From the NCBI RefSeq assembly GCF_032062105.1, contig NW_026919759.1, positions 1 to 64,000 of the forward strand: DNA of 64,000 nucleotides. Reading direction: 5' to 3'. The translations under genes and the position numbers were made by a program. This document shows positions 10,101 to 52,900 of this stretch, in pieces (position 1 is the stretch's first letter; each line of letters starts with the position of its first letter). Below the pieces are notes generated by a model. That model worked only from the letters and a program-made list of their open reading frames with translations, was not told where the DNA came from and ran no database searches. The stretch is from Saccostrea cucullata (lineage: Eukaryota).

Positions 10101-13100
10101 TCGGGGGTAGGGCGAGTGGCCCCTCGATGGATCCCTGACAGCGAGGCACCTAATTGTATGGGGTGTGACATGAAGTTTACGTTTACAAAGAGGAGGCACC
10201 ACTGTAGAGCTTGTGGAAAGGTTTACATCTAAGTGTCTTTTCATGTTTGTGTTGTAACTTTAAGGATTGATTTTATAAGATTGCCTAAAGTGTTCCTCAT
10301 TGAGAATGTAAATACATCTAGCCAACTTATCACTCTAAATTCACTCACTTATGATTACTTTGTTTTGTGCTACCTGTGTCGACTAGCTTTAAGGAAATCA
10401 ACATAATATATATATATATATTTATTGTATAATGTAAATCAAGAATTGCTATAGTGAGTTCAGTAGATAAAATATTTCCTTATTTTGTTAATCTTGATAA
10501 TGGTTTTGACAGGTGTATTGTTCAACATGCTGTAATTTGAAGAGTCGTCTCCCTTACATGGACAACAAAGAGGCTCGCGTGTGTGTTCCTTGTCATCAAA
10601 TGATCGAAGGTAAAATCTATAAATTGGCGTGCAGGTCAAAGGTTAAATCTACAAATAAAAATGTAGATCAAAGGTAAAATCTATAAATAAAAATGTAGAG
10701 GTAAAATCTCTAAATAGTCTTGCAGATCAAAGGTAAAATCTACAAATAGAAATGTAGATCAAAGGTAAAATCTATAAATAGGCATGCTGATTAAAGGTAA
10801 AATCTATAAATAGGCATGCAGATCAAAGGTAAAATCTACAAATAGAAATGTAAATTAATGGTAAAATCTATTAATAGAAATGTGGATTGAAGGTAAAATC
10901 TATAAATAGGAATGTTTATCTAAATAGATGAATTAAAGGCAAAATCTACAATTAGAAATAGAGTTCAATCCAGGGATACCCTGCAGGTTATTTGTAAATT
11001 TAATCCAGAGGTTACATTATCATGATCATAATCTGTATACATAATCCCTTTGTAAAATAAAATCTTGACATTTTCTATCATAATCAGTGTCTTACATTTA
11101 GGGACATGGAAATAACTGCCCTGTCTGCAGAAATCGCTGCTGTCCCATGACATTATTCTTCACATTTTATACTGTTGACAGATTATGTTCATTAAAACCT
11201 GCTTGCCGTATTGTTTCTATTTTTCCTGCCCTGTATTCAGTTTACCTGCTTTGAATGTTCAGCTTTGCTTCTTTTCTGCAGCAGATTTGTGCAATGAAGT
11301 GGAGCAGGGCATAGCATCAGCTACAGGTGAACGACCTTTAACCTCTCCCCCCACAGGTGTACTCAAGCGAGACGGTAAGTATACTTACGTACATGTATAA
11401 GAACTAATGTATCACAGGATTATTGTTAATACACTTTCTTCCATATCAAAGTGCATTTAGAGTTTGGAAGTTGGTAAAATCTCCGACAAATTGCCAGTTA
11501 CAGGTTACATGTTGGTATTTCTGATTTCTCCTTTGTTACTATATTCAGTAAAGAAACTTGAAAATATAGCAATTTTATTGCATTGCTGAGAATGCTTTAT
11601 TATAAATATATATCAGCCTTTATGGTTTCTTTAGGAATGAATGCATTCATTTTCTGTCCTTTTAATTATTTATGCTGATTTCATTACTTGTTTTAGATGA
11701 TTATTATATATAGCCATCTAACTTGATTCTGAATTAATTAAATTAATCCACATAATTTTTGTTCTGGTCTGCTTTGTGAACTTTGAGGCTAGTTTGCTGT
11801 CACAATCTGTTGAATCTTTGTTTAAGTCTAACCTTCTTGGCCACTCCTAGGGGTGGTGATTTTCCACATCCTGTATTTCAGTATATATCTTAGTGAACTT
11901 GAGGGTTGGAGTGTAAGCTGTAGAGTCTGTTTGTAGGTTCCCAGAGGAGACATGAGCCCAAACAGGTGATGTTTTCTGATGGAATCCGGCCTGGTGGTGA
12001 TTTAACCGAGCTTGATGGTTCAAACCAGGCATCCTCCCGACTGCCACTGCGCCGGTCCCAAAGGAGTCAGAAACGAGTTGACAAGTCCAACACAGGTAAT
12101 ACTGGTACCTCAACTCTGTACAACTAATACCTCAACTGTATACAACTTTGGTAATGCAATTAGTTGCAATAAAGTGGCAATTTTGTTATAATCCAGCAAT
12201 AGTCAGGTTAAAAGTTTTGCAGCAGAACTTCTATGCCCTATATATAAATCAGAGATGCATAAACACTTTTAATTTGTTTTATAAATTTTGGTCAATTTCT
12301 TTGTATAAAACTTTTTCAAAATTGCTCCTCAGTGAAAAAAGTTGAACTTCTTCACACTTCTCTGAAACAATTGAAAATGTTTGTTACATTGTAGATGGAG
12401 GAGGGAGACGAGTGCGCTCGAGTGAGACCATGAGAACTCAGTGTCTGATTCCCGAGTCAGGGCTCCCCCCAGTGGTTATACCTCCCAAGTCTAATGAAGG
12501 TCTGTATCAATCAATGGGGCAGTTTTATCTTCCCTTAAAAAGTCAAGACAATGAATACAACTAAAACAATAATATTATCCACAGATTCTTTGTACATGTT
12601 GAGAGTTTTCATAACTGTGGGGCAATTTTATCTTCCCTTAAGAAGTTCAGATACTTATTTAGAAAACGAATACTGCCTAAAACAATAAAATTATACACAT
12701 TAGATTCTTTGTATAATTTTGAGAATTTTCTTAACTGCTGATAATCATTATTTTTGTCTGCTTAAAAACTGAAAAGGATTACAAGTACACCATACAAATG
12801 ATCAAGGATTTTCTTGTATTATTGATATTTTATGACTTTTTGTCTTTGTAGAGTTGACACTTGAAGAAAATCCCTCCATGGAGAAGTACTTACCACAAAT
12901 AAAAGGTCAGTTATTTGTAGATGATTGTAAACTTTACACAAACAATTCGACTGCTGCTTCAGTCCGCTGTGTCACCTCTAATGATAGCTAGAGGTGCTCC
13001 TAGGAATTAAATCAAGAACTTAAATTTAAACCATTATGATTGCAAAATTTACAGGAATTAAGTACATATTGAGTTTTGATGTGGATGATAAACAATATTT

Positions 13101-49900: not shown

Positions 49901-52900
49901 TTTTTATGACATCACAAACTAGTCCAATTTTATATAATTTTTTTAAAAGAGGACAAAATGGACAACATTTCAACAATTTTAGCTTAAAAAAATTATAGAG
50001 TGCAAGTTTGCTCAGGAACAATATTTATATTTCATTAATATTATCATTCTTCTCATTATATCAAAATATTGAGCCTGATCAAACCTGAGTTGATCCTTAC
50101 GTCACAGGTTTGAATCCACTGTGGTACTCGAAGATGATTCTTCGGATGAGACTGTATAAACCAAGATCCCATGTATTTGTAGGTTTTAGCAAAAAATCCC
50201 TTACTGCTCAATGGCTATGAGTGCAAAGTATAGGTATAAATTTGCAGCCCTCCTATAGCAAGTGGCGGCATCTCCATATGAGTGAAAAATTCTTGAGGGG
50301 GAAGTTAAACAAAGAAAGCATATATTGATATAGCTTATTTAAAACAAATGCATGTTCTGGAGAAAGTCTGAGGATACATTGAGCTTGTTATCTATATCCG
50401 TCCATTACTGTTATCTAAAATTTAAAATACTTCAGAAATTCTTATTTTTTCATGGATTGTCATTAAATAAAATATGAATTTATTGATCTATAGAAATGAA
50501 TTTTGCTCTTTTTAGTTGATACATGTATATGAGCAAAGTTTTCTAGTGGCATTATTTGGTTTTGCTACATGTATTTAAAAAAAAAGGAAAATCTAGTCTG
50601 AGCTGCTCAGGTGTACTAGGACAATGAGCAATTGAGCAATACTTTATTTGGATTCATGTTCACTACATATCTGAAATTTCTGTCTATTCTCTACATTATG
50701 CACTCATGAGTTTCAGCAAGTGTACCAATTTAAGGAGAAAATCTTTGAAAATGTCTGACTCTTCTTTTTTTCTGTATTTTAAATGGAACAGTTGAAAATT
50801 GAATATTGGTAGAAATGTCATTGATACTCACTTCATGTTTTATAATTTGGACTGATTATGGAGCTAAAAATTCTTATTCAATGTAATTATTACAAAGAAA
50901 CTAGAACAAAAAAGAATCAGAAAAAATGAGGAACATTGGGAATTTGCAAGTTCATAAAAACTTCCGTTCAATATTTAGACCGTTACAGTAGACAGATGTT
51001 ACAAGGTTATTGAATATTTGAAATATGATGTCCCAGTAAATGTAGGGTGATAATTGAAGTGTTAACAACATGCCATTTGTTGCATAAGATGAATCTAATA
51101 TGTGTGGAGGGGACTGATAATTAGGTTATCTGGATAACTTGTAATTGGTAGCTTTTTAGATCATCCATTTGATGTTCACACGTTGCCATTTTCAGTTTTT
51201 GCAGTCAGTTTGCCACAGATATTGATTTTTAGTATTAAGTGTATGGAACATGTTTTTATTCACGTAGATGAAAACATTTGCAATGCAATAAGTAAAGGAT
51301 TAATATATTAAAAGTAGAGTATTTGATTAAACATATAAAAATAATTTACAAGTTTGTAAAATTATCATATGGACCATTGAAATAAATGATAATAATGTAA
51401 ATTTAAAATACGTTTTAAAGCTGCTAATATATGATGTACACTTGTTTTATTTATGTTTCGCTAATTGAGAAGGAATGTTGTCCTGATCTATTTTCAGGGG
51501 TGCGTGATTACATTCATGTTGTGGACTTAGCTCAGGGTCATGTGGCAGCACAGAAAAAAATTGAAACCAATTGTGGATGTAAGGTCAGTGAGAAAAAGAG
51601 GTTAAAACAATGAAGTATTAATGTAAGTTGTGTATGAATTTTACATTTCCAGTGTGTATAACCAAAAAAATAGTTTGTTGTTGTTTGTTTAAGTTTTTGA
51701 AAAAAAAACGTATCAGTAAGTTTAAAAAAAAAATTAAAAAATTAAATTGAATTTATGAATACAATTTTGGAGATATTGTTATTTTCAGGTGTACAATCTT
51801 GGTACAGGAAAAGGTTACTCTGTGTTGGAAATGGACAAAGCTTTTGAGGAAGCCAGTGGCAAACCAGTAAGTGAAGAAGTCAATGGCAAACCGTTAAGTG
51901 AAGAACTCAGTTACAAATAGATAAGTGGCAACTGGTAAGGTAAAAAGACCAGTGGCAAACTGGTAAGTAAAGAAGCCATTGGTAAATGAAGAAGTGAATG
52001 GCAAACAAGTTACTAAAGAAGTCAATGGCAAACCGTTAAGTGAAGAACTCAGTTACAAATAGATAAGTGGCAACTGGTAAGGTAAAAAGACCAGTGGCAA
52101 ACTGGTAAGTAAAGAAGCCATTGGCGAACTGGTAAATGAAGAAGTCAATGGCAAACTAGTTAGTGAAGAAGTCAATTGCAAACTAGTAGGTGAAGAAGCC
52201 AGTTAGAAACTTGTAAATAAAGAAGCCTATGAAAAACTGATAAGTGAAGGGGCCAATGGAAAACTGGTAAGTGAAGAAGCCATTGACAGACTGTTAAAGC
52301 CAGTGGCAAACTGGTAAGTGAAGAGGCCAATGGCAAACGGATAAGTGAAGAAGCCATTGGCAAACTGACAAACTGGTAAGTGAAGAAGCCATTGACAAAC
52401 TGTTAAAGCCAGTGGCAAACTGGTAAGTGAAGAGGCCAATGGCAAACGGGTAAATGAAGAAGCCATTGGCAAACTGACAAACTGATAAGTGAAGAAGCCA
52501 TTGACAGACTGTTAAAGCCAGTGGCAAACTGGAAACTTGTGGGAAGTGAAGAAGCCAATGGCAAATGGGTAAGTGAAGAGGTCAGTGGCTAACTGGTAAG
52601 TGAGGAAGTCAATGGCAAACTGGTAAGTTTAGAATCAATGGCAATACAGTGAGGTTACATATGTAAAAGCCAGTGACAGACTGTTAACTGAAGACAGAAA
52701 AGGCATGAGGCACTGTCAGTGATTGGGCATTCTGTTAGTCAGCTGGGATACTTTACACTCTACTACTGAACAAACCTATCAGTGTTTTATAGTAGTGTGG
52801 ATAGGTCACAAGCTTAGATTTTCAAATTATATACTTTTCCTGAAGAATAACTCAGAGGATTAAGGATTCATGAATGTCCAAGGTAGAGTGTGTACATTTT

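What the first reader, a model, noticed from the sequence alone, without database searches (positions are those of the whole stretch)
10604..52645. Recurrent tandem duplications anchored on exon boundaries, with synonymous-biased divergence of the extra copies
Seen: at least eight local duplications straddle a coding-exon boundary, in four unrelated genes. They are the SARA donors at 10609, 13630 and 16044; the LAPTM4 acceptor 31599 and donor 31950; the RTF2 donor 39183 and stop codon 35719; and the GALE donor 51866. Five of them copy enough exon to read codons. A hand tally of those gives about 12 of 17 substitutions silent relative to the exon frame (TAT/TAC, GCT/GCA, GGC/GGG; ATA/ATT, AAG/AAA, CCA/CCG; TCT/TCA, ATC/ATT, CAC/CAT; GTA/GTT; ACG/ACT, TGA/TAA). 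A freely drifting intronic copy should give roughly 25-40%. Inference: some mechanism preferentially duplicates splice junctions, and the copies keep exchanging with the functional exon end (unequal crossover, gene conversion or inter-allelic duplication). They would then act as coding-constrained spare exon ends and a source of alternative splice sites and minisatellites. The sample is small and hand-counted.
Basis: partly seen in the sequence, partly recalled or inferred. Interest (0 to 1): 0.85.

Follow-up and report, generated by a model that had tools for sequence, protein, structure and literature searches.

The report
Oyster splice-junction repeats ("mirages")
In oysters, short stretches spanning the end of an exon and its splice signal are often copied head-to-tail into the next intron; this is real and about three times more common at splice donors than chance, but it is a known kind of repeat, and the extra copies mostly mutate freely rather than staying protein-coding spares.

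Summary
All eight duplications are present, and the 12/17 silent tally reproduces. The genome is a Saccostrea oyster. Seven duplications are "mirage"/F7-type exon-intron junction repeats, already described in amphioxus and human genes; the eighth spans a stop codon. The scan noted this kind many times elsewhere in this genome.

Donor enrichment holds: 15 of 153 donors in five oysters versus 5.0 expected (P≈2e-4), and a donor word sits in tandem triplets 11 times more often than its control. Acceptors are not enriched.

The headline claim mostly fails. The tally left out the GALE and first SARA arrays; with them it is 21/40. The right null is about 40%, because the working exon also gains silent changes. 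In independent arrays 56/178 (31%) variants are silent, and variants that arose among intronic copies are near neutral (51/172 versus 25%).

Arrays shared with S. echinata show partial homogenisation with each species' own exon, so exchange occurs. Available transcripts use only the first donor, and most alternative donors would shift the frame. The N gap lies outside every duplication.

The parts
10600..10968 (+). 32-bp x ~10 array whose first unit spans the SARA/ZFYVE9 exon-4 donor (exon ends 10609); 7-10 exon bases per unit
   Evidence: TRF, blastn. Single copy in S. echinata. O. edulis has a different 50-bp x24 array at the same donor.
13577..13711 (+). Two-copy duplication of the last 54 bases of SARA exon 10 plus donor (13577-13632 and 13656-13711, offset 79). 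Three silent differences, all in the 3' 18 bases; the first 37 bases are identical.
   Evidence: Absent in S. echinata. A transcript contig splices at the first donor, 13630.
16004..16267 (+). 53/54-bp x5 array spanning the SARA exon-13 donor (16044), 41 exon bases per unit
   Evidence: Orthologous 64-bp x12.8 array in S. echinata carries that species' own exon and donor letters. First donor used.
31415..31616 (+). 87/88-bp duplication (43/44-bp sub-period) ending in the LAPTM4 exon-5 acceptor (31599); copy acceptor 87 bases upstream; 18 exon bases
   Evidence: 43-bp x34 array at the same acceptor in S. echinata and 34-bp x5.6 in O. edulis.
31949..32121 (+). 28-bp x6 array starting at the LAPTM4 exon-6 donor (31950); only 2 exon bases
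   Evidence: Short arrays just after the same donor in S. echinata, C. virginica and M. gigas.
35676..35745 (-). 27-bp duplication of the RTF2 C-terminal codons and stop (35745-35719) into the 3' UTR (35702-35676); not a splice junction
   Evidence: Present in close-Saccostrea transcripts L079/L080 and absent in S. echinata.
39088..39204 (-). 57-bp two-copy duplication spanning the RTF2 exon-5 donor (39183); 22 exon bases
   Evidence: 48-bp counterpart in S. echinata whose copy matches its own exon exactly. First donor used in L079/L080.
51845..52694 (+). Degenerate 27-bp array (21 aligned copies, higher-order 142-bp blocks) whose first unit spans the GALE exon-7 donor (51866); 22 exon bases
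   Evidence: 27-bp x30 orthologous array in S. echinata.

Best explanation
These are 'mirage' junction repeats. Steps: (1) an ordinary small tandem duplication (slippage or microhomology-guided repair) happens to include a splice donor [inferred]. (2) It is tolerated because the most upstream donor is used and the copies are spliced out with the intron [shown for three donors in transcripts; mechanism shown for human F7, PMC1557585]. (3) Some pairs expand into minisatellites by unequal exchange, which also homogenises them partly with the exon-end unit [homogenisation shown; mechanism inferred]. (4) Purifying selection acts only on the first, exonic unit. It admits only silent changes and so acts as a slowly changing anchor, which keeps these repeats recognisable longer than purely intronic ones; duplicated acceptors compete with the real one and are purged more often [inferred; accounts for about 3x at donors and none at acceptors]. 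(5) Exon-versus-copy differences are therefore expected to be about 40% silent, 2s/(1+s) with s=0.25, while changes among copies are neutral [shown]. The window's 70% is this effect plus a small, hand-picked sample.
For: Donors 15/153 vs 5.0 expected from intronic control positions, P=2.3e-4; without the window 11/114 vs 4.0, P=0.003; acceptors 8/159 vs 5.6, P=0.2. Genome-wide, donor-word triplets per single word 2.7% vs 0.24% for the reversed word; second donor word 2083 vs 852; acceptor word 525 vs 1240. Seven motif-selected arrays (one per contig) start at the 3' end of an exon-like open frame, three confirmed by Pfam. Minority variants among copies 51/172 silent vs 24.7% expected, P=0.08; majority or pair differences in independent arrays 12/26 vs 39%, P=0.29. 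Copies carry nonsense changes and deletions. First-donor splicing. Species-specific homogenisation in shared arrays. Literature: PMC3087553, PMC3902484, PMC1557585, PMC2630376.
Against: The window's two-copy pairs remain more silent than expected (8/10 over all pairs, P=0.0125 vs 40%), though this is the discovery set. An anchor effect alone should give at most about 2x, while the measured donor enrichment is about 3x (small sample) and 2.4-11x by word counts, which count units rather than arrays. The exon-annotated sample is four or five neighbouring genes in five species, not the whole genome, and three S. echinata events are shared with the window (removing them gives P=0.044).
Confidence: 0.72

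Rival explanations
1. Inter-allelic origin and renewal: copies are repeatedly made or overwritten from the exon end of another haplotype (unequal crossover or gene conversion between homologues). In a highly polymorphic oyster they then record silent exon alleles, raising the silent share above 40% without any selection on the copies.
For: Pairs 8/10 silent. Against S. echinata, 5 silent versus 2 replacement changes fall on the copy side in the window's pairs (hand count; hand binomial P about 0.013, post hoc). Four of those five silent states occur in another oyster's exon. In S. echinata a derived silent state is shared by the exon and only the adjacent copy. Three different silent bases occur at one site in array L052. 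Precedent: conversion proposed at the human CBS 68-bp junction duplication (PMC2630376).
Against: Independent majority or pair differences are 12/26, matching the 39% null. The excess among minority variants is small (30% vs 25%, P=0.08). Silent sites have few possible states, so matches to other species are expected. No population alleles could be read.
Confidence: 0.3
2. A donor-directed mutational bias: DNA just downstream of 5' splice sites is intrinsically prone to duplication (for example through co-transcriptional pausing or R-loops, or the exon/intron chromatin edge), so junction repeats arise more often, not just persist longer.
For: Enrichment is donor-specific. Independent arrays recur at the same donor in different genera (SARA exon 4 in the window and O. 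edulis; LAPTM4 exon 6 in four species). Some arrays include only 2-4 exon bases, where the anchor effect is weak (31949; L057).
Against: No direct evidence. The conserved donor motif itself is an anchor. Selection against duplicated acceptors explains the asymmetry equally well.
Confidence: 0.25
3. One reading: the copies are coding-constrained spare exon ends used as alternative splice sites.
For: 12/17 in the chosen set (P=0.011 even against 40%). Two window alternatives are in frame and open: RTF2 +57 and LAPTM4 -87; the S. echinata GALE array is open throughout.
Against: Independent arrays 56/178 silent, rejecting 70% (P about 4e-26). The 13630 copy, the most silent one, lies 79 bases on, so it would be read out of frame. 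SARA 16044 has a stop right after the donor. The RTF2 alternative hits a stop in S. echinata. Using a downstream donor appends a copy and does not replace the exon end. Transcripts use the first site.
Confidence: 0.05
4. Assembly artefact: two haplotypes joined in tandem.
For: The assembly is large and fragmented (1.17 Gb, 23,869 contigs). The 13630 pair is absent from S. echinata.
Against: Four duplications are shared with a separate species' assembly, one is in independent transcripts, and related organisms' DNA contigs cover the 10600, 13656 and 16033 repeats. Units are far shorter than reads. The exon has one genomic match.
Confidence: 0.03

Closest known systems
'Mirage' minisatellites of amphioxus (Adh3, globins BflGb6/BflGb9, troponin C, PGBD5; PMC3087553, PMC3902484)
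   Same: [quoted passage not shown]
   Different: Here in oysters, with a measured donor-specific enrichment against intronic controls and a codon-level tally. Those papers call the mechanism unclear, and the passages I read give no such tests.
Human junction VNTRs: F7 intron 7 (37 bp), CBS intron 13 (31 bp), IFI6/6-16, LMNB2, PDGF (PMC1557585)
   Same: The first unit spans the donor, the rest are intronic pseudo-donors, and the upstream-most donor is used.
   Different: Rare individual cases in human; here roughly 10% of sampled donors. In CBS and 6-16 the nearest pseudo-donors are sometimes used; no such use was seen here, on limited data.
Human CBS c.844_845ins68 (PMC2630376)
   Same: Two-copy duplication of an intron/exon junction in which one copy is spliced out; gene conversion between the copy and the working exon was proposed.
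   Different: There the spliced-out copy carries a replacement change, as expected for an unconstrained copy; it is a single polymorphism rather than a genome-wide pattern.

Membership tests
mirage / F7-type junction repeat | Tandem duplication whose terminal unit spans a real exon-intron boundary | tested here: met
   Seven of eight cases; boundaries confirmed by homology and GT/AG. The RTF2 stop duplication does not meet this feature.
mirage / F7-type junction repeat | Extra units reiterate the splice signal inside the intron | tested here: met
   Most copies keep GT or AG.
mirage / F7-type junction repeat | Normal splicing at the authentic site | tested here: met
   Transcript contigs join at 13630 and 16044 and at 39183. 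Minor alternative use could not be read because the joints table was truncated.
mirage / F7-type junction repeat | Copy-number variability and concerted turnover | tested here: met
   Between species: 5 vs 13 units at SARA 16044, 2 vs 34 at LAPTM4; own-species letters shared by exon and copies.
mirage / F7-type junction repeat | Allelic or somatic length polymorphism within the species | not testable with these tools
   No same-individual or population DNA reads were served; best share of words was 0.15.
coding-constrained alternative exon ends (tandem/alternative exon duplication) | Replacement changes depleted in the copies themselves | tested here: not met
   Minority variants 51/172 silent vs 24.7% neutral; nonsense changes and deletions present.
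coding-constrained alternative exon ends (tandem/alternative exon duplication) | Copy can be spliced in, in frame | tested here: not met
   Only RTF2 +57 and LAPTM4 -87 are in frame and open in the window, and neither is conserved as such in S. echinata.

The most novel reading that the evidence does not exclude
Oyster genomes have a donor-directed duplication bias, and the resulting copies are renewed from exon ends of other haplotypes, so two-copy mirages archive silent exon alleles. That would make oysters, with about 10% of sampled donors affected, a tractable system for the open questions of how mirages arise and whether they seed new introns.
Probability: 0.25. Interest if true: 0.6.

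Novelty: new member of a known kind. Interest (0 to 1): 0.3.

Why it matters
The class is known, but its origin is described as unclear (PMC3087553), and a search of the paper library for oyster cases returned nothing. Mirages at about one in ten sampled donors, with donor-over-acceptor asymmetry, recurrence at the same junction in different genera and exchange with the exon, make oysters a good place to test anchor-persistence against mutational bias and the tandem-duplication route to intron gain. In practice these copies mislead gene prediction and read mapping at exon ends. The claim that gave this finding its high score, coding constraint on the copies, did not hold up, so the interest is moderate to low.

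Tried and rejected
Planned a ~2-Mb sample of the window's genome for an array-level test. I did not try another tool for those letters and did not rebuild sequence from pattern rows; only counts were used afterwards.

The single read-laying run was dominated by transposon rows at 14818-15704 and 16264+, so SNP rows at the exon ends and minor splice joints were cut off. The N gap was neither filled nor looked up, and the S. cucullata RTF2 record's DNA was not fetched.

Three weak probe hits (PIK3R exon 3, M. gigas RTF2 exon 5 and SARA exon 12 donors) were dropped from the codon tally as possible chance; the M. gigas SARA exon-12 hit still counts among the 15 donors in the enrichment test. An acceptor-word enrichment was looked for and not found. 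Two-haplotype misassembly and coding constraint on the copies were considered and rejected (see rivals). Paper searches for oyster mirages and for a synonymous-bias claim found nothing relevant.
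Full report
SETTING. The window is an oyster contig (G000:C1896, 1.17-Gb assembly). 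Its proteins match Ostrea and Saccostrea ZFYVE9/SARA and RTF2; the S. cucullata RTF2 protein matches at 96-100% over most exons. Gene order is SARA(+), LAPTM4(+), RTF2(-), GALE(+), PIK3R(-), and LAPTM4-RTF2-GALE are syntenic in S. echinata, O. edulis, M. gigas and C. virginica. Exons were fixed one by one from homology, GT/AG and phase continuity, then mapped to the other species. The N gap (28375-28540) lies between SARA and LAPTM4, touches no duplication and was left unread.

OBSERVATION. All eight duplications are present. Seven straddle a splice site; one copies the RTF2 stop region into the 3' UTR. The 12/17 silent count reproduces. However, the GALE array carries 22 exon bases per unit, as many as the RTF2 and LAPTM4 cases, and gives 8 silent of 21 distinct variants; SARA 10609 gives 1 of 2. 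The whole window is 21/40.

NOT AN ARTEFACT. S. echinata has arrays or pairs at SARA 16044, LAPTM4 31599, RTF2 39183 and GALE 51866. The stop duplication is in two independent transcript contigs. DNA contigs of related organisms cover the 10600, 13656 and 16033 repeats. The 10609 array, the 13630 pair and the stop pair are absent from S. echinata. The 13630 pair lacks single-molecule proof.

ENRICHMENT. A 20-base probe centred on each boundary was tested for a copy on the intron side and none on the other side, with intronic positions of the same genes as control. Donors: 15/153 vs 5.0 expected (P=2.3e-4); two other probe placements gave 15 vs 4.8 and 13 vs 5.1. Acceptors: 8/159 vs 5.6, not significant. 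Without the window: 11/114 vs 4.0 (P=0.003); also without three events shared with it, P=0.044. Genome-wide, three copies of the donor word AGGTAAG at 25-55 spacing occur 3483 times vs 380 for the reversed word, although the single word is rarer (129,746 vs 158,455): 11-fold. AGGTGAG gave 2083 vs 852 and an acceptor word 525 vs 1240. These counts weigh units, not arrays, so a few long arrays can sway them. On each of the seven contigs fetched by the donor pattern an array begins at the end of an exon-like open frame; three are confirmed as acetyl-CoA carboxylase, alpha-mannosidase and Rubicon exons.

SYNONYMOUS BIAS. With a mutation spectrum taken from the intronic parts of the same units, s=0.25 of random changes are silent. 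An exon-versus-copy comparison spans two lineages: the copy takes all changes and the exon only silent ones, so the expectation is 2s/(1+s), about 0.40 (inference). In independent material (other oysters 39/130; other arrays of this genome 17/48) the share is 56/178 = 31%. Split by class, minority variants, which arose among the intronic copies, are 51/172 (30%, P=0.08 vs neutral; this pool includes the window's arrays) and include nonsense codons and deletions. Differences between the exon and the array majority or single copy in independent arrays are 12/26 (46%), above s (P=0.011) and in line with 0.39 (P=0.29). A residue remains: in the window's two-copy pairs five silent and two replacement changes map to the copy (hand count; post hoc P about 0.013), and four of the five silent states occur in other oysters' exons. 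This is compatible with copying from another allele, or with chance.

EXCHANGE WITH THE EXON. In arrays shared by both Saccostrea species, copies side with their own species' first unit at SARA 16044 (-8 and +2), LAPTM4 (+11) and five RTF2 intron positions, but not at SARA -17 and -26, GALE -1 or RTF2 -4, +7 and +11. In S. echinata a derived silent base is shared by the exon and only the adjacent copy. So homogenisation is real but partial. Replacement variants that are common in copies (for example GCC>GTC in 22/29 S. echinata GALE units) have not entered the exon: selection acts on the first unit only.

SPLICING. A related-organism transcript contig joins at the first donors 13630 and 16044, and close-Saccostrea transcripts use RTF2 39183. 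Most alternative sites shift the frame or meet a stop. Only RTF2 +57 and LAPTM4 -87 are in frame and open, and neither is so in S. echinata. The 13630 copy is 79 bases on, hence out of frame. Low-level alternative use could not be assessed.

MECHANISM. Shown: donor enrichment, near-neutral drift of copies, partial homogenisation, first-donor use at three sites. Inferred: origin by slippage or repair duplication; tolerance through upstream-first donor choice (shown for human F7, PMC1557585); expansion by unequal exchange; longer persistence because one unit is held by selection; and purging of competing acceptors. A donor-directed mutational bias and inter-allelic renewal are open additions, not exclusive of this.

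KNOWN KIND. Tandem repeats over exon-intron boundaries are 'mirages' in amphioxus (PMC3087553, PMC3902484) and junction VNTRs in human F7, CBS, 6-16, LMNB2 and PDGF (PMC1557585). Conversion involving a duplicated junction was proposed for CBS 844ins68 (PMC2630376). Earlier scan notes on other pieces of this genome reached the same label and gave me the lead; I checked the papers myself. No oyster paper was found.

VERDICT. Real, recurrent and donor-enriched, but a new member of a known kind. The synonymous signal is mostly the expected two-lineage effect plus choice of cases. Interest 0.3.

Noticed in passing
window 49108-49170: About 65 intronic bases right after the weak GALE exon-5 donor (GTGCTG) are strongly conserved in S. 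echinata, M. gigas and C. virginica: a possible splicing-regulatory element or alternative exon extension; unexplained.
   Followed up: partly
   Followed up: no
window 12515-12737: A 103-bp duplication begins 15 bases after SARA donor 12499; a related organism's contig skips one copy.
   Followed up: partly
window 17254-20301 (-): Uninterrupted 1015-aa ORF that looks like an endonuclease/reverse-transcriptase LINE, inside SARA intron 13; not seen at the S. echinata locus.
   Followed up: no
window 25788-27874: 23-bp palindromic repeat array (27294-27830) with scattered copies at 25788-25913 and 26518-26609, next to a 30-base G run and upstream of the N gap.
   Followed up: no
window 36709-38072: 168-bp satellite in an RTF2 intron, interrupted by a 212-bp element that recurs at 39327-39540 and 49560-49776.
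   Followed up: no
window 44449-45919: 397-bp inverted repeat (90% identical arms) between the divergently transcribed RTF2 and GALE starts.
   Followed up: no
window 51789-51866: GALE exon 7 reads ...EMDKAF... where S. echinata, M. gigas and C. virginica read ...EMAKAF...: a private replacement or a sequencing error.
   Followed up: no
L037:42204-51660: In S. echinata the block holding the last SARA exon and 3' flank occurs three times in tandem, about 3.8 kb apart.
   Followed up: no
L076 reverse strand 24978-25785: The S. echinata GALE donor array (27 bp x30) is in frame and stop-free over about 800 bases, so any downstream donor would give a repeat-extended GALE.
   Followed up: partly
L062 (G000:C1160) and rows: An acetyl-CoA carboxylase exon followed by a second donor about 53 bases on appears at eight places on seven contigs of this assembly, suggesting an expanded gene family or uncollapsed haplotypes.
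   Followed up: no
L035:17943-19151; L068; L076-L078: The same junctions recur as repeat seeds across genera: SARA exon-4 donor (window and O. edulis, different units), LAPTM4 exon-6 donor (four species) and LAPTM4 exon-5 acceptor (three species). C. virginica has almost none in the probe test.
   Followed up: partly
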